Virus record (IMG/VR): IMGVR_UViG_3300008111_000002
Coordinates: 145,837-209,836 of that record
DNA length: 64,000 bases
Direction: 5' to 3' (one strand)
Below the pieces are notes generated by a model. The model was not told the DNA's origin. It searched no databases and saw nothing but the letters and a program-made list of their open reading frames with translations. Positions 45,746 to 63,762 of the stretch are shown piece after piece. How positions within the stretch are numbered: the stretch's first letter is position 1; every line of letters starts with the position of its first letter. The translations under genes were made by a program, and so were the position numbers.

Positions 45746-45806
45746 AATATTATTTAATCTATTTGTGTGTATAGTGCGGGCAGCGGGGCCTTGGGCCCCA
45801 ACTGCC

Positions 45807-46151
45807 TCAATCCAGCCTAGAACCAGCGTAGGCTTGGAATCCGTATTTCTTAAACACCTGTGCTGCGGCCTCTGCGCCTGCTTCCAGTGTGTCCACATTC
45901 TGGCAACCAAACTTACTTGGGTTCCACATCTGCAGTCCCCCTGAGTAGGCTGGGCGGATATCGCATTCTTTCAAGGCCTTGCCCAACTTGGTATTTCCCT
46001 TGACGCCGTGGATGGTAACCCAGGCGAAGCCACAGGCAAACTGATCCTGACCGCCCAACCTCTCTTGGAAGAACTTGGCTGCTGCCTGATGGGCTGCGGT
46101 CTGTGCCTCTTGAACCACTGCAGGGATCTGCTCTGGAGTTACTGTGATCAT
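45807..46151 (-). CDS. conserved-looking phage hypothetical protein
   Basis: CGFAWV...Q.V...EAGAEAAA.V...GSRLD pattern. Confidence 0.65.
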   Translation of the reverse strand: MITVTPEQIPAVVQEAQTAAHQAAAKFFQERLGGQDQFACGFAWVTIHGVKGNTKLGKALKECDIRPAYSGGLQMWNPSKFGCQNVDTLEAGAEAAAQVFKKYGFQAYAGSRLD

Positions 46152-46273
46152 TGTGCGGTCTCCTTCATGATGGTCTGTGTCTTGCCCACGGCCTTGTCAA
46201 TTGCTGAGGCCACGCCCGAGATACCAACTGTGGCCACGAACATGCCTGCCACGAACGCTATCAAGATTTTCAT
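46148..46273 (-). CDS. 41-aa signal/TM peptide
   Basis: MKILIAFVAGMFVATVG...; ATGA overlap with next gene. Confidence 0.55.
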   Translation of the reverse strand: MKILIAFVAGMFVATVGISGVASAIDKAVGKTQTIMKETAQ

Positions 46274-46371
46274 CGCTCACTCCTTGTTGTCTAAGTGTTT
46301 ACAGTATACTACCTTGCCTGCCCTTTGTCAACCAAAATAAAGACCCTGCTGTGTGCAGGGCCTTTGCTTAG

Positions 46372-46626
46372 TTAATTTACAATTATAATGTTATTTGTTG
46401 CTAGTTGCTGTTTTGCTGATTGTAATGCTTTGTTAATTGCTTGTGCTTTTTGTTGTGCAGTGTCTGTAATATTGCAAATGTCCCCGGTAGCGTAAACTGC
46501 GCTGCGTTGTGTTATGTGACTGTTATTGCAGAAGCTTACTAAAATGCGTAGTGTTTTTAGCTTTTTGTTTTGTACAATTTTAGCAAAAGCTTTTTGTGCA
46601 AGTATTGCGTTAGCGTAAGTTTGCAT
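46372..46626 (-). CDS. hypothetical protein, compositionally biased (Q/A/K/N/I; no Glu, Pro or Trp)
   Basis: SD AAGGAG, own promoter and terminator. Confidence 0.6.
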   Translation of the reverse strand: MQTYANAILAQKAFAKIVQNKKLKTLRILVSFCNNSHITQRSAVYATGDICNITDTAQQKAQAINKALQSAKQQLATNNIIIVN

Positions 46627-46698
46627 TGTTGCGCTCCTTTTTGTTTAACAGTGTGTATATAATAGCACCAGCTGTCCAAAAAGTCAACCAAAATGTTC

Positions 46699-46725
46699 AA
46701 TAACCCGGCACTGCGCCGGGTTATT
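46699..46725. terminator. intrinsic terminator
   Basis: AATAACCCGGC-actgc-GCCGGGTTATT perfect 11-bp stem. Confidence 0.75.
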
Positions 46726-46733
46726 GCTAACAG

Positions 46734-47009
46734 TTACGCATACAAGTAATTGTCGGTGCAATAGTGTACAGTTTTATAAAACTTGCTTTGTGCGTCGGTG
46801 TACATGTGCATAATTGTGTCGCAAAGTTGGACTGCATTTTTATTTTGCATAAACTGTACAAGTGCTGCGTAAATTGTAACAATGTCGGTGTGTTGCTCGG
46901 CGCAGACAGTGTTGTCGGCGTTGACGTCGACAGTGCGTAAGTATTTTGCAATGTCGGCTTGCAAAAGTTGTACAATAATTGCTACGTCGGCGTTAGTAAC
47001 TTTTTGCAT
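46734..47009 (-). CDS. hypothetical protein, compositionally biased
   Basis: ATG after GGAG (MQKVTNADV...). Confidence 0.6.
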   Translation of the reverse strand: MQKVTNADVAIIVQLLQADIAKYLRTVDVNADNTVCAEQHTDIVTIYAALVQFMQNKNAVQLCDTIMHMYTDAQSKFYKTVHYCTDNYLYA

Positions 47010-47139
47010 TGTTAGCTCCGGTAGTTGCACTGCGTTTTGCAGTGTTTAAATTATAGTACCAAAACGCCGGACTGTCAACCAAAAAATTAGTTGTTAAAAA
47101 AGCAACCGGGTCAGTTGGGGGGCGTGTGCCCCCCTCCCC

Positions 47140-47619
47140 TTACTCTGCAGTTACCACGCTGCCTAGTTTGATGTTAAACACAATGCTGTCGTCCCCCGCC
47201 CTAAACTCGCTTGCCAGTGCCGCTGCCTGCGCCTCATCCCTAGTAATCTCTACACCGTTGCGTGTGTAGCGTGGCGCTTTGCGTTCCGCAGTCTTGTCCA
47301 TTGTGCATCGCACATAGTATTCGCCCTTGTGTGCGATAATGTAGGGGAATACAGCCCACTCGCCCCATGGCAAACCTGCATTCTCTGCTGGCAGTTCGCC
47401 AGTTGCTCGCTTCTCAATCACTTCCTCAATCTCGTCGTATACCTGTCCGATGATTGCGGTAAACTCTGAACGCTTAACAATAGCGTCCTGTCCCTTGCGT
47501 ACCTTCAACATACGCTCCGTGACAAACTTGACTGGCTGTTGCTTCTTGCTCAACACCAAGTCCAACAGTTGTTGTGTGTTGTTGTCTGTGCCCTGAACTA
47601 CTAGTTGTGCTATTTGCAT
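47140..47619 (-). CDS. hypothetical protein
   Basis: 159 aa, SD AAGGAG, promoter. Confidence 0.65.
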   Translation of the reverse strand: MQIAQLVVQGTDNNTQQLLDLVLSKKQQPVKFVTERMLKVRKGQDAIVKRSEFTAIIGQVYDEIEEVIEKRATGELPAENAGLPWGEWAVFPYIIAHKGEYYVRCTMDKTAERKAPRYTRNGVEITRDEAQAAALASEFRAGDDSIVFNIKLGSVVTAE

Positions 47620-47843
47620 TTGTTGCTCCTTAGTTGCCTGCGTATCGCAGTATCATTAGTATATGGCCAGCACACCAAAATGTCAACCAAAATATCAAAT
47701 GTCCCATCAGTCCGTAGGGTTATTCATCATGTTCGTTCATCGTCATCATGCAGACATTCTAACACCGTTCGTCCATTTGGTCAAGCCAAAAAAAAGCCCT
47801 GAGCACGTAGCCCAGGGCCTGCCAATCCCGGGAGCGAATCGGG

Positions 47844-48140
47844 TTAGGCAGCAACAGTTGCCGCAGCAGCAGTACTTGCTGTAGCTGTGGCAGGGTTCTT
47901 CTTCGCGGTGTAGGCGATCGCAGCTTCCACAGCAGCATTGCCAGCACCAAAGCCACGAGCCACGAGTTCTTGAACGATCTCACCTTTGGTCATTGGCTTG
48001 CCAAGATCAACCAGCTCAACACCAGTGTGTCCGTTCTTGGCCAGAATCTTGATACGCATCTGGTCATTGGCGAAACGCAGCTTGGTCTTGCCGTTAAGGG
48101 TTGAAACACCTGCTACACTAAAACGCTTGTCAGTCGACAT
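47844..48140 (-). CDS. hypothetical protein with Ala/Thr-rich tail
   Basis: 98 aa, SD GAGAGG, promoter and terminator. Confidence 0.65.
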   Translation of the reverse strand: MSTDKRFSVAGVSTLNGKTKLRFANDQMRIKILAKNGHTGVELVDLGKPMTKGEIVQELVARGFGAGNAAVEAAIAYTAKKNPATATASTAAAATVAA

Positions 48141-48385
48141 AATAATTACCTCTCTGTGTGTGAATAAAAACTACCAACCAATTTGATAGCATTTTGAGTA
48201 TACTACCAAACCATTTGTCCGTCAACCAATTATTTTTCCAAATTGTTTGGAATTGGCAACAATTGCAATAGTTCTTCCACCCTGCGATGATCTGCATCGC
48301 CCGCCCCACCGCATTCGATGGAGAAGGCAAAATTAAATGTTCTTGCCATGCTGTTTCCCTATATAGTCGTATATAGCAGCGGGGC

Positions 48386-49012
48386 CTACTGGTCCACTAA
48401 CTTCAAGGCCTCGCCGCCTTCTTTGGTCCAGCGATAGAGATCCTCATCCATACGCTCTTCCTCTTCGTATTCAGCCAGGCTCTCGCTGATGGCAAAGAAC
48501 TCATCTAGATCTTCGGGCAAGGTATCCTTGGCACCCTGACTGTCACCCCAATCTGAGTAGCAGTCATCACAGCCGTTGTCCCATACACCAGCAAAGCACA
48601 TACCTGGTTCGTAGTAGTATGCACGAACTGTGTAGCCCTGTTCAACCAACTCCTCATAGACTCCTGTGGGAGGTGCCCAGGCTGAATCAAAACTTGCAGT
48701 CATCAAGTTACCATCAGGATGAATATCCAAGGTGCCATCCTGGCCACCTACATCCCATTTAGTTCCCCAACGGCCAGACTGGAATGAATACCAATCACTG
48801 TGACCAAACTTCTCTATGTTGCTCTTAACTCGTGCTTCGTGTGCGGCCTGTTCGTCTCCTCCCACACTGCCTGCCACGGTTTCAGTCAACTCCTTGGGTG
48901 TAGGAATCACATGGTGACAGAACTCGCCACGCTCGTAGGCTTCAGCCAGCGCCTTGATCTTGGCAGGATCCTCATGACCAATTTCTATAAAGTTGTTGCA
49001 CCAATTAGGCAT
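48386..49012 (-). CDS. DUF1281/YubB-like protein
   Basis: MPNWCNN, WY......WGTKWD, FDSAWAPP, YYEPG..FAG. Confidence 0.75.
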   Translation of the reverse strand: MPNWCNNFIEIGHEDPAKIKALAEAYERGEFCHHVIPTPKELTETVAGSVGGDEQAAHEARVKSNIEKFGHSDWYSFQSGRWGTKWDVGGQDGTLDIHPDGNLMTASFDSAWAPPTGVYEELVEQGYTVRAYYYEPGMCFAGVWDNGCDDCYSDWGDSQGAKDTLPEDLDEFFAISESLAEYEEEERMDEDLYRWTKEGGEALKLVDQ

Positions 49013-49013
49013 A

Positions 49014-49241
49014 CTAGGCTCCTCGAATCATGTTTAACAAACGATCGTTCTGTGCGTCTTGATATTGACGTTGCATCACTGTGTCGAAGCGATCAATCAT
49101 ACGATCCTCAATCCTCTGTGCATTCATGTCAAAGATCTGACTCACGGTCTTGTAGATCTTGTGCTGTGCCCACGGAGTAGTCTCGGGGTCCTCTAGCACG
49201 GCCATTGCACGACGAATGTAATCAAACTCTTGAGGTGTCAT
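49014..49241 (-). CDS. hypothetical protein
   Basis: ATG after GGAGCGAAC. Confidence 0.6.
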   Translation of the reverse strand: MTPQEFDYIRRAMAVLEDPETTPWAQHKIYKTVSQIFDMNAQRIEDRMIDRFDTVMQRQYQDAQNDRLLNMIRGA

Positions 49242-49306
49242 AGTTCGCTCCTGTTTAGTTAGTGTGTATATAATAACACACACTAACCAAACTGTCAACC
49301 AAAATC

Positions 49307-49666
49307 TTATACAACCTTGACCTTGCTATAGCCTGCGGACAACAATGCCAGAGCATCTTGTGCAGTTGCTGCCATAGTCACTACACGCTTACGGTTAATA
49401 TGGCCAGTAGTTGGATAGTAACGACCACCGCCATTGCCGATGGCATTGAAGTTACCACTACCAGGATTGAATCGATTATTGTTTCCCAGAATCCAACGAT
49501 TGAGGCGACCGTCCTTGATTGATCGAAGGTGATCACTGTTTTCGAGAATGTTCATTCTCTTAGACATATCCTCGCTCCAGTAACCAAGAGCGTTGGCCAC
49601 GTCTTTAGTATAGCACAGGGGATGAGCAGCGACGTATTCGCAAATCATCTGATTTTGACTTTTCAT
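49307..49666 (-). CDS. hypothetical protein, possible N-terminal winged HTH
   Basis: ICEYVAAHP..YTKDVANALG...SKRMNILE. Confidence 0.5.
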   Translation of the reverse strand: MKSQNQMICEYVAAHPLCYTKDVANALGYWSEDMSKRMNILENSDHLRSIKDGRLNRWILGNNNRFNPGSGNFNAIGNGGGRYYPTTGHINRKRVVTMAATAQDALALLSAGYSKVKVV

Positions 49667-49732
49667 GGGTTCTCCATAAAGTGTTGTTTAGTTCAAACAG
49701 TATAACAGGGGGTTGCCCCCCTGTCAACCAAT

Positions 49733-50086
49733 TTATGCCTCTGCAAATGCCTCCAACGCTGCCTGTGCCGCACCGTCCAGCATTACGCCATCTTGTGCTT
49801 TAATCTTGTCTGCAGTTACCTTTATGCGGTATGCGTCCATCTCTGCAGTCTTTGCTTCCATAGCAGGCCACACTACGTCTTGCGGGTTAAGGTAAGCACC
49901 TGTGTAGTCTACCTTGTCCTCTTTCAGTGTAATCTCGCCTGCCTTAATGCCTTCAAACACCATGCCCCATGTAGGCTGTTGCGGACGGCCAGTAGGGCCA
50001 AACAGTTCCACTGCCTTTGCCTGCAGTTTCTCTGTTGCAATTTCATTCAAGCGACGGAGAAAGTAATTGCGTTGTTCCTGTTCCAT
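49733..50086 (-). CDS. hypothetical protein
   Basis: 117 aa, SD AGGAG, hairpin promoter. Confidence 0.65.
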   Translation of the reverse strand: MEQEQRNYFLRRLNEIATEKLQAKAVELFGPTGRPQQPTWGMVFEGIKAGEITLKEDKVDYTGAYLNPQDVVWPAMEAKTAEMDAYRIKVTADKIKAQDGVMLDGAAQAALEAFAEA

Positions 50087-50108
50087 AATACGCTCCTAAA
50101 AAGTCTGT

Positions 50109-50160
50109 CACTGCAAAATTGCAGTGTGTGTATATTAACACACACTGCCCAATCTGTCAA
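50109..50160 (-). promoter_or_regulatory. promoter with -10 inside a 10-bp inverted repeat, plus leader hairpin
   Basis: CACTGC-aaaatt-GCAGTGTGTG-tatattaa-CACACACTGC...TGTCAA. Confidence 0.85.
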
Positions 50161-50165
50161 CCGTT

Positions 50166-50477
50166 TTATGCCTCAAAATTTTCTACAATCATAATACGTC
50201 CAGCCAGCAAGTCTTCTACCAGTTGCACTGCTCGCCGCTCTGTGCCGCCAATGTGCCAGTCATAGTGCCCCATGGGAGTGCCATACTCTTTCCAGTCGTA
50301 AATCGTTGCTACTGTGCCGTCGCTAAACTCAATGCACCACTCCTGCGTGGTCTTGTCGCCACCGCCCATCCCCTCCCCCAGCAAGTCCTGCAGCTTTGCA
50401 AAGGTGGTTCCTACATAGCCCTGCAGATGTGTGCCGTTGAACTTTTCTGCAAAGTAATCGTAAACTCGTGCTTCCAT
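50166..50477 (-). CDS. conserved-looking phage hypothetical protein
   Basis: LQGY..T..KL..LLG....DKT..EW.IEF.DG.VATIYDWK.....WHIGG. Confidence 0.65.
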   Translation of the reverse strand: MEARVYDYFAEKFNGTHLQGYVGTTFAKLQDLLGEGMGGGDKTTQEWCIEFSDGTVATIYDWKEYGTPMGHYDWHIGGTERRAVQLVEDLLAGRIMIVENFEA

Positions 50478-50495
50478 GTTGCGCTCCTAGTATGT

Positions 50496-50547
50496 CACTG
50501 CGTTATTGCAGTGTGTGTATAGTAACACACACTGCCCAAAATGTCAA
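50496..50547 (-). promoter_or_regulatory. promoter with -10 inside a 10-bp inverted repeat, plus leader hairpin
   Basis: CACTGC-gttatt-GCAGTGTGTG-tatagtaa-CACACACTGC...TGTCAA. Confidence 0.85.
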
Positions 50548-50550
50548 GTG

Positions 50551-50766
50551 TTAAATTGTGCTGTACTTTCTGTATTCCTTGCCGCCCACGTTGCTGTACC
50601 ACAGCCCGTTAGTTTTTTTGTAATAACCCTGCTTGTACCAGTTTTTAATCTGTGTTGCGTGTTGCTGTCTGCCCTGCTCTGCAATAGCTTGTTCCAACGT
50701 CATTGTAGCACCTGCTGCGTCTTGTGCTGCCTGCTGTGCTTGTTGTTGTGCGTGTAGTGCTAGCAT
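50551..50766 (-). CDS. hypothetical protein (no Pro)
   Basis: SD AAGGAG; Gln/Ala-rich. Confidence 0.6.
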   Translation of the reverse strand: MLALHAQQQAQQAAQDAAGATMTLEQAIAEQGRQQHATQIKNWYKQGYYKKTNGLWYSNVGGKEYRKYSTI

Positions 50767-50783
50767 AGCTTGCTCCTTAGTTG

Positions 50784-50835
50784 CACTGCGTTATTGCAGT
50801 GTGTGTATATTAACACACACTGCCCAAAATGTCAA
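50784..50835 (-). promoter_or_regulatory. promoter with -10 inside a 10-bp inverted repeat, plus leader hairpin
   Basis: CACTGC-gttatt-GCAGTGTGTG-tatattaa-CACACACTGC...TGTCAA. Confidence 0.85.
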
Positions 50836-50844
50836 CCAAAATGT

Positions 50845-51168
50845 TTATACTTCCATGCTTGCAAGTTCGTCTTCTTGCATACCCTGCTCTGTAAAGCGCA
50901 CACCAAACCCTAGTGCATCACTAATAGCACTTTCAAATGCACTGTCTGTGTATATGTCCCATGTGCTGTTGTGCGTTACATTAACCATAACGCTTACATT
51001 GTCGTCATAAGCATTTGTCACAATGCTAATGCCTGTCACACGCACTTGCCTGTCAGCCTCGCAGCCCCACAAGCCGTCGCCAGCTGTCCAAACAGTAAAG
51101 TCGCAGTCAAAGTCTTGTGCAGTGTAGTCGCCGTCAACCTCAAACCGTGTAAGTGTAAGTTTTTGCAT
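50845..51168 (-). CDS. acidic hypothetical protein (no Pro)
   Basis: SD AGGAG; 107 aa. Confidence 0.65.
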   Translation of the reverse strand: MQKLTLTRFEVDGDYTAQDFDCDFTVWTAGDGLWGCEADRQVRVTGISIVTNAYDDNVSVMVNVTHNSTWDIYTDSAFESAISDALGFGVRFTEQGMQEDELASMEV

Positions 51169-51242
51169 TGTGTGCTCCTGTGTGTCACTGCGTTAGTGCA
51201 GTGTGTATATAATAGCACCAGCTGTTCAAAATGTCAACCAAA

Positions 51243-51401
51243 TTATTCTGCGTAACCGTCTTCTTCCCAGCCCTCGTAGGTGGCATTAACTCCCGCAGAG
51301 TTTACATCAGTCATCCCAGCAATCTCGTCTGCTGCTTCTGCTGTGTCTGCTTCAACCTGTAAAGTATATGTTACAGTCTGTGTGTAATAAAATTTAGGCA
51401 T
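51243..51401 (-). CDS. small hypothetical protein
   Basis: ATG after AGGAGCGAG (MPKFYY...). Confidence 0.55.
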   Translation of the reverse strand: MPKFYYTQTVTYTLQVEADTAEAADEIAGMTDVNSAGVNATYEGWEEDGYAE

Positions 51402-51422
51402 CTCTCGCTCCTGTAAAATTAA

Positions 51423-51462
51423 ACAGCGTGTGTATAGTAACACACGCTGTCCAAACTGTCAA
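51423..51462 (-). promoter_or_regulatory. promoter with a covaried inverted repeat around -10
   Basis: ACAGCGTGTG-tatagtaa-CACACGCTGT...TGTCAA. Confidence 0.85.
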
Positions 51463-51467
51463 CCAAT

Positions 51468-51686
51468 TTAGGCAGGCTCTCCTGAGCGACCTTGATGAAC
51501 TCGGGCAGGTCCGCCGGCAGGCAGGTGGAGTTCGAGATCAGCTTCCATGACCACGTAATAGGCTTTGAGAACTTCTAGATTGTATTCATCGGGATTGGCC
51601 TTGATCGCCATCAGCTGCTCTGAAAAGGACTGATCTTTGGCATAGGCTTGAATTCTAATGATTTCGCTGGCTTTGGAAATGTCCAT
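51468..51686 (-). CDS. hypothetical protein
   Basis: SD AAGGAG, promoter. Confidence 0.55.
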   Translation of the reverse strand: MDISKASEIIRIQAYAKDQSFSEQLMAIKANPDEYNLEVLKAYYVVMEADLELHLPAGGPARVHQGRSGEPA

Positions 51687-51753
51687 TTGTTCGCTCCTTT
51701 GTTGCTATGTGTGTATTATAGCACTATGTGTCCAAAATGTCAACCAAAATAAA

Positions 51754-51779
51754 AGCTGTGGCATTTCTGCCACAGCTTC
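51754..51779. terminator. intrinsic terminator
   Basis: AAGCTGTGGCA-tttc-TGCCACAGCTT. Confidence 0.75.
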
Positions 51780-51838
51780 CTTAGTTGCTAAATCTTAATT
51801 AAAACTGTAAATTACGCCCTGTGCGCTCTCGCTTTTTA

Positions 51839-52090: not shown

Positions 52091-52265
52091 AACACGCTCC
52101 TTGGGTTACACTGCACATCGCAGTATCAATACTATAACACCAGTTGTCCAATCTGTCAACCAATAAAAACCCAGTAGGCAGTAAGGACAACGGCGTAGAT
52201 CACAAGTGCGGGGATGACCTGTGACATTGTGTCACTAACAATCCATTCCGCGTATTCTTTATCGT

Positions 52266-55826: not shown

Positions 55827-56903
55827 TTAATTCTCCATGGCCTTCAAAACATACTTACCGTATTTCTTGTGGAACTCATCAAAGTTCTTCATCTTTGTTG
55901 CGTCCAACGGCAAGTTGTAGTTAGTAAGGGCAGTCTTAGCACCCATCACAACCAACTCTGTTGGGAAGTTATCCATCATGTAGCGGAAGAAGCAGTCCGC
56001 CTGACTGTCCCAATTAGTAGCCTTCTTGTCTGCTTGATCTTTGAGCTCGTAGCACAAGCTCACAGTCAAGGAATACATGGCTGACACTTCCTTAATCTGC
56101 AGGTCCTTAACCTTGCCGCTAAGGATGTCGGGAGCCTTAGGCAGTTTACCAGCAATCTTACGATGTGCCATAAACTTAACAGCCAAGCCGTCACCAATAG
56201 CACCTGCAACCAAGTCAGTGAGCGTGTCAGTGTCAGTGTCATCGTCCTGCAGGAGATCGCTGACGAACACCCATGAACGAGGAGTTGCAAAAGCCTTAGA
56301 GCTGGACTTGGGATCAAAGTCATACAAGTCCTGCTTGGCAAAGCCTACATAACCAACAACCTCAGGATGGATCTTGTTAGCAGTAGCCCACTCTTGGAAA
56401 TCGTCAAAGTCAACTTTGGCTTCCAAGTGCAGGAAGCGGTTGGCCAACGGAGCAGGCATACGATAGGTAACACCCTTGTCGCCATCGCGGTTACCAGCCG
56501 CTACAATGTCCACGCCCTTGGGCAGGATGTATTGTCCTACACGACGGTTCAGAACCAACTGGTAGGCGGCCGCTTGGACTGCGGGAGGAGCGGAGTTGAG
56601 CTCGTCCAAGAAGATGATTGCACGGCTGTCTGGGTCAGTGGGCAATTCTGCTGGGGGTGCCCAAACCATTGTGCCTTGTTCTGCGTTGTAATAAGGGATA
56701 CCTTTGATGTCTGTAGGTTCCCAGAGTGGTAGACGAATATCAATTACTTCTCTCCCCTCGGAGTCGCCAATCTGCTTGACGATGTCACTCTTACCAATAC
56801 CGGGCGGGCCCCACAGGAACACCGGACGGCGCTTTTGAATTGCTTTTTGAATTGCCTTCTTGGCCTTCTTAGGACCAACCTGGCGAATAGAATTATCAGA
56901 CAT
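55827..56903 (-). CDS. MoxR-like AAA+ ATPase
   Basis: GPPGIGKS, FLDELN, AAGNR, LANRF, TPRSW. Confidence 0.9.
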   Translation of the reverse strand: MSDNSIRQVGPKKAKKAIQKAIQKRRPVFLWGPPGIGKSDIVKQIGDSEGREVIDIRLPLWEPTDIKGIPYYNAEQGTMVWAPPAELPTDPDSRAIIFLDELNSAPPAVQAAAYQLVLNRRVGQYILPKGVDIVAAGNRDGDKGVTYRMPAPLANRFLHLEAKVDFDDFQEWATANKIHPEVVGYVGFAKQDLYDFDPKSSSKAFATPRSWVFVSDLLQDDDTDTDTLTDLVAGAIGDGLAVKFMAHRKIAGKLPKAPDILSGKVKDLQIKEVSAMYSLTVSLCYELKDQADKKATNWDSQADCFFRYMMDNFPTELVVMGAKTALTNYNLPLDATKMKNFDEFHKKYGKYVLKAMEN

Positions 56904-56972
56904 TTAAGACCTCCAAAAAAAGTGTTTTGCTACTTGCTACTGACTGTGTCGTTCAGTTCATATATTATGCGT

Positions 56973-57623
56973 TCAAACTGCTGTCTTGTCAACGACAATC
57001 TTCACATAATTCAACTGTGTTGTATTGTCGCCACGCACGTTCTTGATCTTGCCCTTGATGGTATACTCACCGCCCACAGGCAGCTCTTTGTTGAACCAGA
57101 AGTCCACGAAGCTGTTGTTCATACGAGCGGTGATATGATATTTGTTGTAGTGAATGCTATAGCGTTGTTTGATTACCTGAATGTCACCCTCCACACGCTG
57201 ACCATCAGTGCCTGTTAGCTGATCGCTTTCACGGATCTGATCCATGAGCTGCTTGTTGGCATGATCCTTGAGCATGACGTAGGGGAGGCAGCTGACCACG
57301 CTGAGCTGATAGCTGTCTTTGGCCGAATCAAACTCCTCACGCTGAGTCAGCTTGAGCGCAGTGGTCTGAAAGTCGTTGATCTTGCCACTGAGCTGCAACA
57401 GAAGGTAACCAGTGAAGTGACGGCGAACTTCGCGGCCTTCAATGATATCATTCTCAGTTACGGGATTGGGTTCTTTGCCCATCAACCAGAACTTGACCAA
57501 GACCTTGTTGCAGCGAGTCTCGATCTTCTGAGTCTCAGTGTTGTAGACGTCGCTCTTGAAGTAGCCGCCGTTGATACGGTGTGCTGCAACTGCTGTACCC
57601 CAAACAAGATCTGCTGTTAGCAT
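56973..57623 (-). CDS. hypothetical protein, possible C-terminal OB fold
   Basis: C-terminal beta pattern ...YTIKGKIK...TTQLNYVKI. Confidence 0.5.
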   Translation of the reverse strand: MLTADLVWGTAVAAHRINGGYFKSDVYNTETQKIETRCNKVLVKFWLMGKEPNPVTENDIIEGREVRRHFTGYLLLQLSGKINDFQTTALKLTQREEFDSAKDSYQLSVVSCLPYVMLKDHANKQLMDQIRESDQLTGTDGQRVEGDIQVIKQRYSIHYNKYHITARMNNSFVDFWFNKELPVGGEYTIKGKIKNVRGDNTTQLNYVKIVVDKTAV

Positions 57624-57757
57624 TATCGCTCCTTGTGTCTAAGTATGTATATTATATGACCTCTTTTGGATTTTGTCAACCAAAAGAAAAGCCGCACTAG
57701 GCGGCTCAAAGAAATTCCCCGGGAGCGAATCGGATCTTTTACTTTGTGTAGTTCCTC

Positions 57758-58003
57758 TTAGGCGAACACGTTAGCGCGGCTACCAGTGATGTCACGAGCA
57801 GAAACGCTGTACTGAGCGCGGCCGTCTTTGTTCTTGTGCTTGCGAACAACAAGACCTGCTTGACGGAACTCAGTCATACGAGCGCGGAGATTCTTGATAC
57901 CGTAGGTGCTGTCAGCTTGCAAAGAGCTGAGGCTGTTACCTGTACCGCGGAGATGTGACTCCAAGAATTCCTTTTGAGTAGTTTTGATAGTTGTAAATGG
58001 CAT
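57758..58003 (-). CDS. small winged-HTH-like DNA-binding protein
   Basis: LESHLRGTG.SLS..QA...YGIKNLRARMTEFRQAGLVV. Confidence 0.55.
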   Translation of the reverse strand: MPFTTIKTTQKEFLESHLRGTGNSLSSLQADSTYGIKNLRARMTEFRQAGLVVRKHKNKDGRAQYSVSARDITGSRANVFA

Positions 58004-58095
58004 TTTAAGTTTCCTTTGTTAAATGGCTAACATTCGTTAGCGTCCTGTTATTATGCACTCTTGACCATCCCTGATCAAGAGTGCATTTTGCCAAT

Positions 58096-58284
58096 TTACT
58101 TCTTAACAGTAATATCTGAACGAATAAACATACCAATTACCAAAACAGCCAACCACGTCCAGAAGGTGAACGGAATGGCCAGAGTGGGGAACAGTGTGTT
58201 CAATGCCCAAATAACTGCCCAGGGGAACAGTACTATCAGAACCAATAGGGCAATAATAAACCCTGCGACACCAAGCTTGATCAT
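58096..58284 (-). CDS. small membrane protein
   Basis: Two hydrophobic helices, SD AAGGAG. Confidence 0.6.
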   Translation of the reverse strand: MIKLGVAGFIIALLVLIVLFPWAVIWALNTLFPTLAIPFTFWTWLAVLVIGMFIRSDITVKK

Positions 58285-58286
58285 AA

Positions 58287-59369
58287 TTAACTCCTTTTCA
58301 TAACAGTGACTTCTGCCATGCTCTTCCAATTAGTAGGAAAGCTCTTGCGCAGATCTGCACATTTTAGCACAGTTCTAAGGCTGAGTTCACGCAGACGATT
58401 CTTGTTCACGTGAATAAATTCTAGGATCTCGTCCTTGACACAGTCTTCAAACTCATAACTATCTAGCATTCCGTCCTGCGTGATCTGCTTGATCCTGAGC
58501 ACTTTCTCACGCTCAGTATCCATTTGGAGATCAATATAGTGACAGCGTGACTCTAGTGCCGCCAAGTGATCCTGAAGCTTCTTAGAGCGAACATTCTCAA
58601 ACTTGATGTTAGTGATAAAGATAGCGCCTGCTTTGAACTCAAACTTGTCCGGCACTCCCTCTGTGCGCAGTACACGGCTGTCAGTGTTCCACGAAATGGT
58701 TCGCTTACTGCCACTGTCCAAAGCCGCTTTGAGGATGTTCAAGCTCAAGTCATCTAGTAGCACTGAGTCGCAGTCATCAAACACCACGACATTGCCCTTC
58801 TCACTGTACTTGTAGAGCTTGCTATATAGACCCACTGCTGACATTGCGCCCTTGACAATCTCGTACTTGGGCTTGCGTTGTCCCATCATGTCAAACAGAT
58901 CGTCCTTGCTCAGTACTTCTTCAACACCAAACGATTTGCCTACACCCGGAGGGCCTGTAACAATCATTGCGCGAACTGTGCCTTCTTTCACGGCTTTGGT
59001 CATCTCTTTCAGTACATCAAAGCGACCCCGTAGGCGTTCAATGATCTGTTCATCAGTCTCGTGTGCAATCACTGCATCTGGAACTGAGTTCTGCACCAAG
59101 CTCATAACACCCTCTGGCTCTGTGCTCTTGACGGGTTCTGTAATAGCAGGCAGTTCACCCTCTACTACAGTATACGAACGTGGACCCTGGCAACGGATGC
59201 GGATATTACGCTCTGGGAATCCCTCACAGCTAGCACCGTTGACAGTAACATAGCCTGTGCCGTCACTGCCCACGCGAAACTGCTCTACCAATTCAAATCG
59301 CCGACCCGCAACTGAAGTGTCCTGTCCGCGGATTTTGTAAGTACCTTCTAGTATTTCAATAACAGCCAT
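58287..59369 (-). CDS. AAA+ ATPase with N-terminal extension
   Basis: TGPPGVGKS, VVFDDCD, LKAALD, FITN, ALESRC. Confidence 0.8.
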   Translation of the reverse strand: MAVIEILEGTYKIRGQDTSVAGRRFELVEQFRVGSDGTGYVTVNGASCEGFPERNIRIRCQGPRSYTVVEGELPAITEPVKSTEPEGVMSLVQNSVPDAVIAHETDEQIIERLRGRFDVLKEMTKAVKEGTVRAMIVTGPPGVGKSFGVEEVLSKDDLFDMMGQRKPKYEIVKGAMSAVGLYSKLYKYSEKGNVVVFDDCDSVLLDDLSLNILKAALDSGSKRTISWNTDSRVLRTEGVPDKFEFKAGAIFITNIKFENVRSKKLQDHLAALESRCHYIDLQMDTEREKVLRIKQITQDGMLDSYEFEDCVKDEILEFIHVNKNRLRELSLRTVLKCADLRKSFPTNWKSMAEVTVMKRS

Positions 59370-59435
59370 GCTCGCTCTCCTGTGTGTGTAAAGTCATTAT
59401 TATAGGGCCACTAGGGCCCTATGTCAACCAAAACC

Positions 59436-59903
59436 TTACCAGCTGCTACAGTATTCAAAATCCCAAGCTTCTGGCAGTTCCAAACAGTCGTTGACAATTT
59501 GGACTGTGGTCTCTAGATCATCGTAGTAGTATTGATCGTAGTCAGTGCTGCCAAAGAAGAATCCGCTGGCTGAGGGCAACAGAGTTGCTGCACGATCTCT
59601 GTTGGCCAGTACTTCTTCACAGAGCTGCTTGAGCTTGATCAACTGCTCCCTGCTGACGTAGTGAGGCTTACATTCGTCCTCGCCCCCCTGCACGTTGTCA
59701 ACGAACCATTGATGAATAGCATTGGCCTTGCGCCAGTAGCCGGCCTCAATGCGTACTTCTTTGACGCAGCTGTCTGCACCCGATCGATCCCGGCCCTTGA
59801 GTTCTGGGAACTGCTCTTGAATAGCTTCTGCACGTTCCTTGTCTGCTTCATCCATGTAACCGCTGATGTAGCGTTTACCGCTGAGATACATGTCTAAACC
59901 CAT
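59436..59903 (-). CDS. conserved-looking phage hypothetical protein
   Basis: MGLDMYL, GYWRKANAIH.WF, GFFFGSTDYD..YY. Confidence 0.7.
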   Translation of the reverse strand: MGLDMYLSGKRYISGYMDEADKERAEAIQEQFPELKGRDRSGADSCVKEVRIEAGYWRKANAIHQWFVDNVQGGEDECKPHYVSREQLIKLKQLCEEVLANRDRAATLLPSASGFFFGSTDYDQYYYDDLETTVQIVNDCLELPEAWDFEYCSSW

Positions 59904-59946
59904 GATTCGCTCCTAAGTAGTTTAAAGGAAGTACTAGTATACGATC

Positions 59947-60438
59947 TCAGCTGCCCGTTGTCAATCGGAGAACGCCTGGGCGGCCCTTGACCGGTTCAAA
60001 ACCTTCAATAAACATGTGATGAAGGTCGCCTGAATTTGTGATCAGATTGTTGGCCAACATGTACATGGTTCCCCAGGTACGACCCTGCAGTTCAGCTTCC
60101 ACAGGCTCAGGGCCCCAATGACCGTCATAGATCACAGTGTGATAGTCTTGATAGGGATGCTCTTGGTAGAGATCATCAACTTCGTAGATGCTCCAAACTG
60201 AGCCCAAATCAAATTCAACAGCAAACGAACGATAGTTCTCGTACTTGCGATCAAATGCTTCAGTGTCCTGATCATAGGCATGCTTTAGCCCCTGTTCAAA
60301 ACCCCTGATCACAGCCTGCAGCTGATCAGCGAGATTATTGTTGATCACTCCCGTGAGCTTTTGCTGCACTGTGCGCAGCTGGCAGAGAGTGTTGTGTACC
60401 GTGGTAAAGTCTTCGCCCTTGAGTGTAACAGTTTGCAT
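59947..60438 (-). CDS. hypothetical protein
   Basis: 163 aa. Confidence 0.6.
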   Translation of the reverse strand: MQTVTLKGEDFTTVHNTLCQLRTVQQKLTGVINNNLADQLQAVIRGFEQGLKHAYDQDTEAFDRKYENYRSFAVEFDLGSVWSIYEVDDLYQEHPYQDYHTVIYDGHWGPEPVEAELQGRTWGTMYMLANNLITNSGDLHHMFIEGFEPVKGRPGVLRLTTGS

Positions 60439-60439
60439 A

Positions 60440-60814
60440 TTAGACCTCTACAGTGTGTGAATGACGCAGCGACAGCATGAACAGACGTTGGCTTAACTGT
60501 GCTGCTGCCTGTTTGGCCTGCTGTAGCGCAGTACCGATTATATCCTCAGCTGTGCCATCTGTCAATACCTCGCGGGCATCACCATAGCAACAGCCACCTA
60601 GATACTCTGAGGCCAGCTCGTGATCATCTATCAGTACACGAACACGCAGCATGAACCAGTCATAGTAGCCCGTGTCAATCTGCTCACAGAGCTGACTGAT
60701 ATCAGTAACTGAGTCATCGAAACAGTCCCGAGGATGCATGTCTTCCCAGGTCTTGTCCACTATGATGTCAAAGCCATCCCGCTCCATGCGGGCCAATTGA
60801 TCAAAATGTCGCAT
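60440..60814 (-). CDS. hypothetical protein
   Basis: MRHFDQL..., EYLGGC.Y. Confidence 0.6.
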   Translation of the reverse strand: MRHFDQLARMERDGFDIIVDKTWEDMHPRDCFDDSVTDISQLCEQIDTGYYDWFMLRVRVLIDDHELASEYLGGCCYGDAREVLTDGTAEDIIGTALQQAKQAAAQLSQRLFMLSLRHSHTVEV

Positions 60815-61058
60815 ACAGTTCCACCTTTGGATCAAGCTTGAACAATTCGCCCTCAGCACCCTTTAACAGTGTGTAGCGGCGCTGTACTTCAGATCTGCTG
60901 AGTTCACCATCGCAGGTAAGATTCTCGGGACTCAGTGCTGCTGCAATGTGATCAGCAACACGTTGACGATCTTCAAAGGTCTCTAAGGTTAACAATTGCT
61001 GCTGGAAGATCTCGCGGAAGCGATTCTCCTGAGCCAAGTACTTGTTGAGGTATTTCAC
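60801..61058 (-). CDS. hypothetical protein
   Basis: GTG start after GGAGCGAAC; LSPENLTCDGELS. Confidence 0.6.
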   Translation of the reverse strand: MKYLNKYLAQENRFREIFQQQLLTLETFEDRQRVADHIAAALSPENLTCDGELSRSEVQRRYTLLKGAEGELFKLDPKVELYATF

Positions 61059-61134
61059 AGTTCGCTCCTGTAAACACTGCACATCGCAGTCTTAACAGTA
61101 TACGATCACAGATCCAAACTGTCAACCACAAAAA

Positions 61135-61156
61135 AACCCTACTGTACAGTAGGGTT
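61135..61156. terminator. perfect 22-bp palindrome/terminator
   Basis: AACCCTACTGTACAGTAGGGTT with poly-A on the left. Confidence 0.7.
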
Positions 61157-61167
61157 ATTCAAGCCCA

Positions 61168-61479
61168 TCAGCCGCGATCTATTTCAAGGTCGGGTTCATC
61201 GTCTAGGATCTTGTAGTCTGAAACGCGATCCCAGCGGAAACTGCGCCACTCGCCTTTGTCTAGATCCCACACGGGCTGCACATCAGGATTGGGTTCTTTG
61301 ATGCCTCGAGGATGCTGCGATCCTGGCACGTAGTCCAAATTTGTAGTGCCGCGCAGCACACGTTGCGACCCATCTGCTTTGGTAAACGTTACAGCAACTT
61401 CTCCAGCAGCCAATGCACGTCTAACCTGATCTTTAAATTCAGCTGCTTCTGCTAGCTGCATGTCTTCTACTACTCGCAT
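61168..61479 (-). CDS. WYL_2-like (Sm/SH3-fold) protein
   Basis: VTFTKADGSQR.LRGT, VWDLDKGEWRSFRWDRV. Confidence 0.75.
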   Translation of the reverse strand: MRVVEDMQLAEAAEFKDQVRRALAAGEVAVTFTKADGSQRVLRGTTNLDYVPGSQHPRGIKEPNPDVQPVWDLDKGEWRSFRWDRVSDYKILDDEPDLEIDRG

Positions 61480-61508
61480 AGTTATTCTCCAATTATATAT
61501 TTAACTGT

Positions 61509-61595
61509 TGGTGCCCGGAGCCGGAATCGAACCGGCACGCTGTCGCCAGCGAGAGATTTTAAGTCTCTTGTGTCTACCTATTTCACCATCCGGGC
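61509..61595 (-). tRNA. tRNA-Leu (anticodon UAA)
   Basis: GCCCGGATGGTGAAATAGGTAGACAC...AGAGA-CT-TAA-AA-TCTCT, long variable arm, GGTTCGATTCC, 3' CCA. Confidence 0.95.
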
Positions 61596-61598
61596 ATT

Positions 61599-61675
61599 TG
61601 GTGGGCCCCCCGGGACTTGAACCCGGACTCAACGGATTATGAGTCCGCTGCTTTAACCAATTAAGCTAAAGGCCC
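61599..61675 (-). tRNA. tRNA with CAU anticodon, probably Ile2 (lysidine type)
   Basis: GGGCCTTTAGC...GCGGA-CT-CAT-AA-TCCGT...GGTTCAAGTCC...CCA; no initiator C1:A72 or GGG:CCC stem; C4 and overall resemblance to Ile2. Confidence 0.85.
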
Positions 61676-61687
61676 TCAACAGCAGCA

Positions 61688-61716
61688 ACTATACAGTGTT
61701 AAAGGTCTTTTGTCAA
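61688..61716 (-). promoter_or_regulatory. sigma70 promoter for the tRNA pair
   Basis: TTGACA-17 bp-TATAGT. Confidence 0.75.
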
Positions 61717-61971
61717 TGGATTATTTGAGTCGTTCGCTCGGTCTTTGCTCACGACAAATTCTACGAATGTATCTAGACGATGCGCAACGATGTCAGGTGC
61801 AGCACGACATAAACAATCCAGATCAAAATCAGTGGGATAGTGACGCAGCAGTGCAGCAGCTTGTGTACGTATGATCTTGGGCACACCAGGTGTATTAATG
61901 CCCGCAGCTAGATCACTGAGAAATCGTCGCGATTCACGTATAGCACGATAGCGTTCGTCAGGTAATGTCAT
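61699..61971 (-). CDS. BPSL0761-like protein
   Basis: MTLPDERYRA......FL..L....TP.VPK.IR..A..LLRHYP. Confidence 0.65.
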   Translation of the reverse strand: MTLPDERYRAIRESRRFLSDLAAGINTPGVPKIIRTQAAALLRHYPTDFDLDCLCRAAPDIVAHRLDTFVEFVVSKDRANDSNNPLTKDL

Positions 61972-61977
61972 ATATGT

Positions 61978-62157
61978 TTATGTTGATAGGTATGTAGCAG
62001 CGGGGCCTTTGCGTGGCTTGATGTCATTGTCTCGTTCCCAGTGTATTTCTTCACGTAGTTGACCGTAGAAGTCACTGAGAGCCTGCAGGTATCCCACGTT
62101 ATAGCTCAGTATATTAGTAGCTATGAACACTAGTGTAATTAGAATTTTAGTTAACAC
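61978..62157 (-). CDS. 59-aa N-terminally hydrophobic protein
   Basis: GTG start, MLTKILITLVFIATNILSY...; TTGACA-18-TATAAT at 62186-62215. Confidence 0.45.
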   Translation of the reverse strand: MLTKILITLVFIATNILSYNVGYLQALSDFYGQLREEIHWERDNDIKPRKGPAATYLST

Positions 62158-62457
62158 GGTGGGATCCTAAGGTAGAGATACTGTTATTATATACGCATAT
62201 TTATGTGTGTGTCAATATTATGAATAGATATCTACATATATGTGTAGTATATACACAACACAGCAGCGGGGCCAGTTGACAGTGTGCGTATACTGTGTTA
62301 AACCCCCCTGAGTTGTGACTCTACGTTAAGAAATAGTCCAGGGAACCGTGGGAAAAAATAGGTCTTATGGTCCGTTATAGTGGGGTCCCTACTGTGAATT
62401 TTAGGCTATTTACAGCGTGTATAATGGTGGAGTGAGGGGTATACAAAAAATGGTCCC

Positions 62458-62507
62458 CTCTATAATTCTCTATAATTCTCTATAATTCTCTATAGTTCGC
62501 TATAATT
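62458..62507 (+). repeat. tandem 10-bp repeat, 5 copies
   Basis: CTCTATAATT x3, CTCTATAGTT, CGCTATAATT. Confidence 0.9.
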
Positions 62508-62810
62508 GTCTACTGTGCGTATACAGTTATAACTGTTGCAGCGGGGCCTAAGCAGAGTTCGTAGAACGAGCCTCCTATCGTCTTGGTTGATCTTGACAGT
62601 GTTTGTGCTGTTCTGCATTAGGTTTCTTGCACAGTTCTCGTATCTGTTGTTCTAACCTAATTCTCTTTGGTTCGTGTACAGTGTGATACATTACTATGTG
62701 TGCTGTAAAGTACATGACTGTGAATACCACAAGTGTTATAGTGTATTGATTCATATATTGCAGCGGGGCCTATACATGTTTTGGGTTTTATACTGGTTAG
62801 TGTTAACACT

Positions 62811-62839: not shown

Positions 62840-62847
62840 TCAGTGAA

Positions 62848-63756: not shown

Positions 63757-63762
63757 GGTAAT

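What the first reader, a model, noticed from the sequence alone, without database searches (positions are those of the whole stretch)
45780..62770. Strand-polarised 11-mer GCAGCGGGGCC repeated seven times, independent of reading frame
Seen: perfect copies on + at 45780, 48376, 54411, 61997, 62263, 62538 and 62760. I noticed none in reverse orientation and none left of 45 kb. Inside genes it is read in different frames (APLQ versus GPAA). The last four are spaced 222-275 bp apart. Established: Chi and KOPS are short polar motifs for RecBCD/AddAB and FtsK. Inference: a polar DNA signal such as a Chi mimic protecting entering DNA, or a helicase/translocase loading site.
Basis: partly seen in the sequence, partly recalled or inferred. 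Interest (0 to 1): 0.66.

Follow-up and report, generated by a model that had tools for sequence, protein, structure and literature searches.

The report
Strand-locked 11-mer signal in jumbo-phage early genes
The repeated 11-mer is real and conserved in the early-gene block of a group of uncultured ~350-kb phages, where it looks like a local gene-control or DNA-organising signal and not a genome-wide Chi or KOPS type motif; what reads it is unknown.

Summary
All seven perfect + strand copies exist at the stated coordinates. None is on the other strand and none lies elsewhere in the 209,836-bp virus record (0.01 expected by chance). The window is the end of a jumbo myovirus contig. All copies lie in a 22-kb, higher-GC early-gene block transcribed on the minus strand, so the gene-sense form is GGCCCCGCTGC.

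The same box (GRCCCCGCTRY) occurs in 77 non-redundant related contigs: 280 sense copies, 0 antisense. Three 96-100% complete relatives of 353-383 kb hold only 3-5 copies each.

The layout is conserved:
- an array of 2-4 copies, 150-360 bp apart, brackets an iteron-bearing non-coding unit and small conserved ORFs;
- the array ends just upstream of a BPSL0761-family gene (42 of 45 loci);
- a further copy sits about 50-110 nt past the VWA gene stop.

In the window lineage that last copy lies inside a real 190-aa gene, coded as APL, or TPL where the box reads GAC.

It is not a hairpin, a terminator, a sigma70 promoter or a MotA-type box, and no phage RNA polymerase or sigma70-family factor was detected.

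Best reading (about 0.35): a recognition box for a sequence-specific factor controlling early-block units. Chi or KOPS is unlikely (about 0.03). The function is unproven.

The parts
62760..62770 (-). Box copy 1 of the array (sense form GGCCCCGCTGC). It lies about 35-45 nt downstream of the predicted start of the sigma70 promoter at 62839-62811 and 5 nt before the ATG of a 59-aa ORF.
62538..62548 (-). Box copy 2 of the array, followed by the non-coding iteron unit.
62263..62273 (-). Box copy 3 of the array, 47 nt upstream of the -35 of the consensus sigma70 promoter at 62215-62186.
61997..62007 (-). Box copy 4, the last of the array. It lies 25 nt before the ATG of the BPSL0761-family gene and inside the last codons (GPAA) of the 59-aa ORF 61978-62157.
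54411..54421 (-). Box copy inside the conserved 190-aa gene (read as APL), about 92 nt past the VWA stop.
48376..48386 (-). Box copy whose first G is the last base of the TAG stop of the 208-aa gene. A 39-aa ORF starts 26 nt after it.
45780..45790 (-). Box copy 17 nt after the stop of the 114-aa gene. Only here it forms the 3' half of a local hairpin (GGGGCC-CAA-GGCCCC). The next ATG is at 45745.
62458..62512 (-). 5.5 tandem 10-bp iterons (GAATTATAGA on the sense strand) between copies 2 and 3. Relatives carry AAAGTGTGA-type iterons at the same place, in one relative (L345) inverted.
61699..61971 (-). BPSL0761-family gene (90 aa, helical). It follows a box copy within 140 nt in 42 of the 45 related loci that hold the gene.
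62575..62754 (-). 59-aa ORF with a hydrophobic N-terminal stretch, between copies 1 and 2. It has no Shine-Dalgarno sequence. Relatives have other conserved small-ORF families in this slot.
53941..54513 (-). 190-aa gene of a conserved family (155 relatives). Its ATG overlaps the VWA stop (TAATG). It carries the box in a variable loop.
54513..55712 (-). VWA/DUF2201 gene. A box copy lies 40-110 nt past its stop in most related loci that reach that far.
55827..59369 (-). Conserved module between the array and the post-VWA copy: an AAA+ protein weakly like RFC (58287-59369), a winged-helix HTH_39 protein (57758-58003), a 216-aa protein (56973-57623) and a MoxR ATPase (55827-56903).
42500..64000 (-). 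Early-gene block. GC is about 48% against about 35% in the rest of the record. All genes are on the minus strand. It holds about 28 near-consensus TTGACA-17-TATAAT promoters, several directly behind intrinsic terminators.
61509..61675 (-). tRNA-Leu(TAA) and tRNA-Met(CAT), just downstream of the BPSL0761-family gene.

Best explanation
GGCCCCGCTGC (consensus GRCCCCGCTRY, always on the coding strand) is a cis-acting recognition box special to the early-gene block of one clade of ~350-kb jumbo myoviruses that depend on host RNA polymerase.

The most likely working: a sequence-specific protein, probably phage-encoded, binds the box on DNA in one fixed orientation. It binds at the borders of a few early units: directly after the preceding stop codon, and directly before the next ribosome site or sigma70 promoter. 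In this way it would switch those units as a set, apart from the ~30 ordinary sigma70 early promoters. The units are the small ORFs and the iteron unit of the array, the BPSL0761-family gene, and the genes after VWA.

Shown here: the box, its strict polarity, its conservation across 77 loci, its conserved places, and its maintenance even inside a protein-coding gene.

Inferred, not shown: that a protein reads it, that it is read as duplex DNA and not as transcript, and that the outcome is control of expression.
For: Real and non-random: 7 copies against 0.01 expected.

Conserved: 69 loci with 189 unique instances have 11 fixed or nearly fixed positions and only weak flanks. Across 77 non-redundant loci there are 280 sense and 0 antisense copies.

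Local, not genome-wide: 3-7 copies per large record, and 3-5 in genomes 96-100% complete.

Placement:
- Of 82 instances with a clear upstream ORF, 51 have the stop 1-45 nt before the box, 13 of them sharing the TAG. Only 6 lie deep in an ORF.
- A consensus sigma70 -35 starts 0-56 nt downstream in 51 instances. Only 4 instances have such a promoter within 60 nt upstream.
- Conserved small ORFs start 12-40 nt after a box, with no room for a sigma70 promoter.

Conserved layout: an array, then the BPSL0761-family gene, in 42 of 45 loci, plus a copy after VWA.

Selection acts on the nucleotides: the copy inside the 190-aa gene is kept in three lineages, and the residue follows the local box variant. 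It is APL with GGC in the window and L347, and TPL with GAC in L345.

Other DNA-type motifs accompany the box:
- iterons that differ between phages, and are inverted in L345;
- GTGCGTAT/ATACGCAC, enriched 19-fold within 80 nt, in both orientations;
- no consensus RNA fold in the unit between array copies.
Against: No reader protein is identified. The BPSL0761-family protein has no fold match, and it also occurs without the box in more distant phages.

Strict co-orientation with transcription is equally what a co-transcriptional or RNA signal would show. Because every gene of the block points one way, orientation relative to genes cannot be told apart from orientation relative to the genome end.

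The 10.5-bp periodicity of box-to-(-35) distances (p about 0.011 on 32 collapsed groups) can be explained by UP-element modules of fixed size.

Copies 150-360 bp apart, with ORFs between them, are unusual for an operator array.

No expression or binding data could be obtained.

Many instances are orthologous, so counts overstate the number of independent events. The loci were found with patterns that required two like copies.
Confidence: 0.35

Rival explanations
1. A co-transcriptional signal read on the non-template strand or on the nascent RNA, in the manner of RfaH ops or lambda nut. RNA polymerase transcribing the early block would meet the box, pause or pick up a factor, and then read through the many terminators of the block.
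For: 280 of 280 copies are in sense orientation. The box lies in transcribed intercistronic positions right after stop codons, as nutR does after cro (my own knowledge). Copy 1 of the window lies about 35-45 nt after a predicted transcript start. Transcription and ribosomes clearly pass through the box, since it lies inside the 190-aa gene and in ORF tails. The block has many intrinsic terminators that a processive complex would need to override. It is an 11-12-nt GC-rich asymmetric element like ops.
Against: There is no sequence likeness to ops or boxA and no attached conserved hairpin. No NusG, RfaH or N-like gene was sought or found. Where a promoter is adjacent, the box is upstream of it far more often than downstream (about 50 against 4), so transcripts from that promoter never contain it. 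Rfam finds nothing.
Confidence: 0.2
2. A polar DNA signal of genome mechanics: part of a replication origin (initiator or helicase loading, fork barrier), of packaging or terminal-repeat formation, or a site of strand-specific nicks as in T5 or phiKMV-type phages.
For: The array brackets a conserved unit with 4-5 phased iterons and alternating purine-pyrimidine palindromes. There are few copies per genome: a cluster plus distant single copies. In G006 and G007 the array sits at the head of the early block, in G006 where gene direction diverges. In 22 loci a divergent 68-aa gene lies just upstream. Arrays often lie within 0.1-3 kb of contig ends. The closest cultured relative, PA5oct, carries its small early genes in a 39-kb terminal repeat.
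Against: There is no AT-rich unwinding stretch or initiator gene next to the array. Spacing is far wider than in known iteron or terminase-binding arrays. Copies keep places relative to single genes, not to ends. No read-level data are available to show nicks, termini or coverage steps.
Confidence: 0.2
3. A phage-specific promoter or activator box of a second temporal class, serving the units that lack a sigma70 promoter.
For: Genes starting 5-35 nt after a box lack both a sigma70 promoter and a good Shine-Dalgarno sequence, while most other genes of the block have their own promoter. Box plus sigma70 promoter in tandem resembles early-plus-middle promoter pairs of T4 (my own knowledge). All copies are in sense orientation.
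Against: No T7-like RNA polymerase, beta or beta' homologue, or sigma70 region 2 was found in the record, in five large relatives, or in three genomes 96-100% complete. No -10-like or AT-rich element lies at a fixed distance; information content beyond +8 is about zero. The core is 10 of 11 G+C. Only 3-5 copies occur per complete genome. Distances from box to ATG vary from 5 to 77 nt.
Confidence: 0.07
4. A Chi mimic or KOPS-like orienting motif: the host's RecBCD/AddAB or a translocase reads it on entering DNA.
For: Strict polarity. The + strand form carries AGCGG, and it would face a nuclease entering from the array end in the orientation that Chi needs (my own knowledge of Chi). The clustering near one end of the block is also consistent.
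Against: It is not genome-wide: 3-5 copies per 350-380 kb. Eleven positions are selected, against 5-8 in known Chi sites. Copies are tied to particular gene borders. In G006, G007 and G012 the array is tens of kb from the contig ends. No low-GC bacterial genome carries such arrays.
Confidence: 0.03
5. A repeat with no function of its own: a scar or footprint of small mobile cassettes, or a recombination hotspot that shuffles early genes as the promoter-stem-loop cassettes of T4-type phages do.
For: The units between copies are very variable in length and content among relatives.
Against: Breakpoints of similarity between related arrays do not cluster at the boxes. 11 nt is too short for homologous exchange. 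The box is kept intact while its flanks diverge, and it is kept inside a gene with the residue following the box variant.
Confidence: 0.05

Closest known systems
Chi (RecBCD/AddAB) and KOPS (FtsK) polar motifs
   Same: Short, asymmetric and strictly strand-polar.
   Different: Those act through high genome-wide density and skew and are 5-8 nt long. This box is 11 nt, occurs 3-10 times per genome, lies only in the early block, and holds conserved places next to particular genes.
T4 MotA box and middle promoters; promoter-early stem-loop cassettes of T4-type phages
   Same: A phage-clade-specific short box in intergenic slots of an early region full of strong sigma70 promoters and terminator-promoter cassettes, often in tandem with an early promoter.
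   Different: No -10 element lies at a fixed 11-13 bp. The box is GC-rich. There are very few copies. No MotA/AsiA-like reader is known here. Similarity breakpoints do not cluster at the box.
RfaH ops element and lambda nut/boxA
   Same: An 11-12-nt asymmetric element on the sense strand of long transcription units, placed after a stop codon and repeated a few times.
   Different: The sequence is unrelated, there is no boxB-type hairpin, the box usually lies upstream of the adjacent promoter, and no cognate factor is identified.
Operator or iteron sets with a distant partner (lambda OL/OR, P4 ori/crr)
   Same: A cluster of like, non-palindromic sites plus single sites some kb away, next to other protein-binding repeats.
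   Different: Sites are 150-360 bp apart with ORFs between them, all in one orientation. Binding has not been shown.
N4 virion-RNA-polymerase hairpin promoters
   Same: GC-rich short element in tandem copies at the head of an early region. The neighbouring MoxR and VWA genes resemble N4 gp24 and gp25.
   Different: There is no inverted repeat or hairpin in or around the box. The phage is a jumbo myovirus, and no T7-type polymerase domain, the fold of the N4 virion polymerase core, was found.

Membership tests
Chi site | Frequent and strand-skewed along the whole replicon and host chromosome | tested here: not met
   7 copies within 17 kb of 210 kb. 3-5 copies in 353-383-kb genomes that are 96-100% complete. 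The host is unknown, so the host-chromosome part could not be tested.
Chi site | Core of 5-8 nt read by RecC or AddB (my own knowledge) | tested here: not met
   Eleven positions are conserved at 81-100% in 189 instances.
Chi site | Attenuates RecBCD/AddAB nuclease | not testable with these tools
   Needs a biochemical assay with the host enzyme.
KOPS / SRS translocase-orienting motif | Dense genome-wide skew that switches at the terminus | tested here: not met
   There are no copies outside the early block.
Single-subunit (T7-like) phage RNA polymerase promoter | A cognate polymerase gene in the genome | tested here: not met
   PF00940 is absent from the record, five large relatives and three complete relatives. 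The control genomes have none either, so sensitivity is unproven.
Single-subunit (T7-like) phage RNA polymerase promoter | About 20 conserved bp running into an AT-rich start region at a fixed distance | tested here: not met
   Only the 11-mer, four weak positions upstream and eight weak positions downstream are conserved, and the core is GC-rich.
N4-type hairpin early promoter | 5-7-bp stem with a 3-nt loop centred near -11 | tested here: not met
   There is no inverted repeat in or flanking the box. Folding energy upstream equals the control.
Sigma70 promoter or MotA-type middle promoter | A -10 hexamer at a fixed distance from the box | tested here: not met
   There is no information peak from +9 to +40. 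Candidate -10-like hexamers start 7-15 nt after the box in the window copies (read from the sequences printed). Consensus sigma70 promoters follow at 0-56 nt.
Intrinsic terminator | GC-rich hairpin followed by a T run | tested here: not met
   Only one window copy (45780) lies in a hairpin, and none has a T run. True terminators occur elsewhere in the block.
ops / nut antitermination site | Lies in the transcribed leader and recruits a NusG-family or N-type factor | tested here: inconclusive
   The box is sense-strand only and transcribed, but mostly upstream of the adjacent promoter. No factor gene was sought, and there is no sequence likeness.
Operator or iteron type protein-binding sites | Several like sites clustered at a control or origin region, bound by a specific protein | tested here: inconclusive
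   Clustering, conserved places and accompanying DNA motifs are met. Binding is not testable here.
Known RNA family (Rfam) or self-cleaving ribozyme | Match to a covariance model, or a conserved fold | tested here: not met
   Only the tRNAs score in 42-64 kb at E up to 1. The unit between copies has no consensus fold.
Coding repeat (collagen-like GPAG) | Period a multiple of 3, inside one long ORF | tested here: not met
   That is true of the GC-rich false hits (periods 15, 18, 33), which were set aside. In this clade spacings fall equally in all three residues mod 3.

The most novel reading that the evidence does not exclude
The box is the loading or recognition signal of a so far undescribed factor. 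Either the factor reprogrammes host RNA polymerase on the sense strand (an ops-like system owned by a jumbo phage that has no polymerase of its own), or the box is a polar DNA checkpoint at the genome end that enters first. In both cases it would be a new class of phage cis-signal, shared by a widespread uncultured clade.
Probability: 0.15. Interest if true: 0.75.

Novelty: new variant of a known kind. Interest (0 to 1): 0.45.

Why it matters
Jumbo phages of this kind rely on the host polymerase, and how they time their hundreds of small early genes is barely known. An invariant, strand-locked 11-mer that is kept even inside a coding gene, at 3-10 places per 350-kb genome and across dozens of environmental contigs, marks a control point that can be tested directly by end-mapping, pull-down or reporter assays. 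It is also a handy sequence tag for recognising the early block of this clade in metagenomes. It does not bear on Chi or KOPS biology.

Tried and rejected
- N4-like reading. The MoxR and VWA genes resemble N4 gp24 and gp25, but the best cultured matches are jumbo myophages, a relative carries both the VWA and the tail sheath genes, and the box is no hairpin.
- Chimeric assembly as the cause of the GC jump. The VWA-bearing relatives are all fragments of ~350-kb phages, and one of them also carries the tail sheath gene. The same block sits inside large contigs of box-bearing relatives.
- Sigma54, sigma32 or ECF promoter by eye: the spacing and letters do not fit.
- MotA-type box: no fixed -10.
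- Terminator: rejected.
- Rfam families: none.
- Cassette recombination at the box: no breakpoints there.
- Helical phasing between array copies: none that can be interpreted, and the sample is biased by the search pattern.
- Phasing of the box to -35: present but ambiguous.
- Concerted G/A change at position 2 as a sign of co-evolution with a reader: 17 of 77 loci are mixed, and the search patterns favoured pure loci, so no weight is placed on it.
- An apparent in-gene copy in G006 is GGCCCCGCTGA with poor flanks, probably a chance match.
- An analogous motif in the PA5oct terminal repeat: none.
- Host clue from bacterial genomes: only chance hits in GC-rich genomes, collagen-like genes and an unrelated REP-like repeat.
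- Fold of the BPSL0761-family protein: a confident model with no PDB match.
- Literature search for the letters: only unrelated primers.
- Not used: the large representative protein search, complex prediction, any genetic code other than table 11.

Full report
**1. Observation**

GCAGCGGGGCC occurs seven times on the + strand at exactly the stated coordinates and never on the minus strand. Dinucleotide shuffles give 0.01 copies. The window is the last 64 kb of a 209,836-bp IMG/VR virus record that CheckV rates 60% complete. The rest of the record has no copy, and no one-mismatch variant on that strand.

**2. Setting**

The record is a jumbo myovirus. It encodes a tail sheath, a DNA polymerase and giant fibre-like ORFs. 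At about 42 kb of the window GC rises from about 35% to about 48%.

From there to the contig end:
- all genes are on the minus strand and mostly small;
- there are about 28 near-consensus TTGACA-17-TATAAT promoters, all on the minus strand, several directly behind intrinsic terminators;
- there are two tRNAs, a MoxR ATPase and a VWA/DUF2201 gene.

So this is an early block read by host RNA polymerase, and the motif is always in gene-sense orientation as GGCCCCGCTGC.

The VWA protein matches jumbo myophages best: PA5oct at 46%, then Phosso, Atu_ph07 and RaK2-like phages. Related VWA-bearing contigs are fragments of ~350-kb phages, one of which also has the tail sheath. The block is therefore native to this phage group and not an assembly chimera. 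PA5oct uses host polymerase with TTGAC/TATAATA promoters and keeps its small early genes in a 39-kb terminal repeat.

**3. The element elsewhere**

The closest contigs (71-79% VWA identity) carry the same box or one-letter variants in the same orientation. Each has an array of 3-4 copies plus one copy just past VWA.

A scan of IMG/VR for two copies 205-235 nt apart returned at least 120 stretches. I removed the GC-rich collagen-like coding repeats. That left 69 loci with 189 unique instances.

The logo is cA.A GGCCCCGCTGC. The last letter is C in 81% and T in 16%. There is a weak C-poor, purine-rich, then T-rich flank at +1 to +8, and nothing further out.

A scan for the GAC form added a sister set. 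Together there are 77 non-redundant loci with 280 sense and 0 antisense copies of GRCCCCGCTRY.

Large relatives hold 3-7 copies, each set within 10 kb or less. Three genomes 96-100% complete, of 353-383 kb, hold 3-5 copies. A relative at 58% VWA identity has none.

**4. Anatomy**

Position relative to genes and promoters:
- Of 82 instances with a clear upstream ORF, 51 have the stop 1-45 nt before the box, 13 of them using the first G of the box in a TAG stop.
- A further 19 have the stop 11-40 nt after the box, and only 6 lie deep in an ORF.
- A consensus -35 starts 0-56 nt downstream in 51 instances. Only 4 have such a promoter within 60 nt upstream.
- Hairpins are not enriched upstream of the box.

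The array has a conserved order:
- box;
- a non-coding unit with an inverted repeat, 4-5 iterons of 10-11 nt, and the blocks CCATTT..AGCCTC..ACCACC;
- box;
- one or two small ORFs;
- box;
- usually a sigma70 promoter;
- a BPSL0761-family gene.

The BPSL0761-family gene follows a box within 140 nt in 42 of the 45 loci that hold it. The iterons differ between phages: GAATTATAGA in the window at 62458-62512, AAAGTGTGA in most relatives. In L345 they are inverted relative to the box. The unit has no consensus RNA fold.

The small ORFs form conserved families. They start 12-40 nt after a box, and some run through the next box, read as APL or GPAA. Transcription and ribosomes therefore pass the box.

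**5. The most telling copy**

In most relatives that reach past VWA, a box lies 40-110 nt past the VWA stop in an intergenic gap. In the window lineage a 190-aa gene abuts VWA with an overlapping TAATG. That gene belongs to a conserved family of 155 relatives aligned at full length. The box is still there, 92 nt into the gene, in a variable loop, read as APL.

In L347 the same gene carries GGCCCCGCTGT at the same place. In L345, where all eight copies begin GAC, the gene carries GACCCCGCTGC and the residue is Thr (TPL).

Selection therefore acts on the nucleotides at that place. An efficient terminator or RNA cleavage site would be hard to reconcile with a gene that has to be expressed.

**6. 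What it is not**

- There is no hairpin of the N4 type, no terminator and no Rfam family.
- There is no -10 element at a fixed distance.
- No T7-like polymerase and no sigma70 region 2 was found in the record or in three complete relatives. No beta or beta' homologue was found in the record or four large relatives.
- Similarity breakpoints between arrays do not fall at the boxes.
- For Chi or KOPS the distribution is wrong by orders of magnitude, and the element is too long.

**7. What it most likely is**

I commit, at about 0.35, to a recognition box for a sequence-specific factor that controls a small set of early units on DNA. The grounds are:
- few copies, in a cluster plus distant partners;
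- conserved places at unit borders;
- maintenance against coding constraint;
- company of other DNA-type motifs: iterons, and GTGCGTAT/ATACGCAC enriched 19-fold within 80 nt in either orientation;
- post-VWA copies preceded by a GTGTGGC..GCCACA inverted repeat that resembles the iteron core;
- in the window, GATAGAGATC 10 nt after the 54411 copy and its exact reverse complement 46 nt before the 48376 copy.

Box-to-(-35) distances cluster at 6-8, 16-19, 27-30, 37-39 and 47-50 nt. A Rayleigh test at 10.5 bp gives p about 0.011 on 32 collapsed groups. This can also arise if the box simply abuts UP-element modules, so I give it little weight.

The rivals are a co-transcriptional ops/nut-like signal (0.2), an origin, packaging or nick signal (0.2), a second promoter class (0.07), a functionless repeat (0.05) and Chi/KOPS (0.03).

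**8. Limits**

- Many instances are orthologous, and the loci were ascertained with patterns that required two like copies, so counts overstate independence.
- The position-2 G/A pattern (50 pure G, 10 pure A, 17 mixed loci) cannot be used as proof of co-evolution with a reader.
- Every gene of the block points one way. Orientation to transcription and orientation to the genome end therefore cannot be separated.
- The host is unknown.

Noticed in passing
window 42000-64000: GC jumps from about 35% to about 48% over a one-strand block with about 28 near-consensus sigma70 promoters, nearly all with a 17-bp spacer. Several sit directly behind intrinsic terminators whose T run merges into TTTTGGTTGACA, the same layout as the promoter-early stem-loop cassettes of T4-type phages.
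   Followed up: partly
window 62458-62512, and the first array unit of L099, L104, L112 and others: 5.5 tandem 10-bp iterons lie inside a conserved non-coding unit (inverted repeat CAGTAAGTGTGATTTACTG, iterons, CCATTT..AGCCTC..ACCACC in relatives). The iteron sequence differs between phages and is inverted in L345. No consensus RNA fold. Origin-like or operator-like.
   Followed up: partly
window 54391-54400 and 48433-48442: GATAGAGATC lies 10 nt after the 54411 box copy. Its exact reverse complement lies 46 nt before the 48376 copy. It shares ATAGAGA with the window's iterons.
   Followed up: no
within 80 nt of box copies in 69 related loci; window about 62290-62300 and 62515-62525: The alternating purine-pyrimidine word GTGCGTAT/ATACGCAC is about 19-fold enriched near the boxes, in both orientations.
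   Followed up: partly
window 42519-42725 (minus strand): This 68-aa gene lies at the far, downstream end of the block. In 22 relatives its homologue lies 350-750 nt upstream of the array on the opposite strand. The whole block therefore seems inverted or rearranged in this phage, or it is part of a terminal repeat.
   Followed up: no
window 61699-61971: The gene after the array belongs to the NCBIfam BPSL0761 family: more than 1000 metagenomic relatives, an invariant N-terminus MTLPDERYRA, a confident helical model and no PDB fold match. Weak tblastn matches occur in Synechococcus phages S-N03 and S-B68.
   Followed up: partly
window 61971, 45745, 62754; L345 3185, 14000: Genes that start 5-35 nt after a box lack a recognisable Shine-Dalgarno sequence. 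In L345 one sigma70 promoter ends 8 nt before an ATG, which would leave a very short or no leader. Translation without a leader, or by re-initiation, may be common in this block.
   Followed up: no
record outside the window: G000 77260-91155 (L012:260-14155, minus strand): A 4631-aa ORF with CBM_5_12, FG-GAP and T7 tail-fibre N-terminal matches, followed by a 1142-aa ORF. Probably giant fibre proteins.
   Followed up: no
record outside the window: G000 71-4447 (L008): A 1458-aa ORF at the very start of the record, with two stretches matching the ubiquitin-activating enzyme E1 FCCH domain (E 3.6e-20).
   Followed up: no
L264 (MAG contig JBJMGV010000061.1): An unrelated REP-like repeat, GGCCCCGCTGAACGCGGGCGTTAGG, occurs seven times on one strand of a bacterial MAG contig. 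It shares the first ten letters with the box by chance.
   Followed up: no
window 61509-61675: The tRNA-Leu(TAA) and tRNA-Met(CAT) pair lies next to the array. PA5oct lists Met(CAT) and Leu(TAA) first among its tRNAs. The Leu gene is 89% identical to one in EBPR podovirus 3.
   Followed up: no
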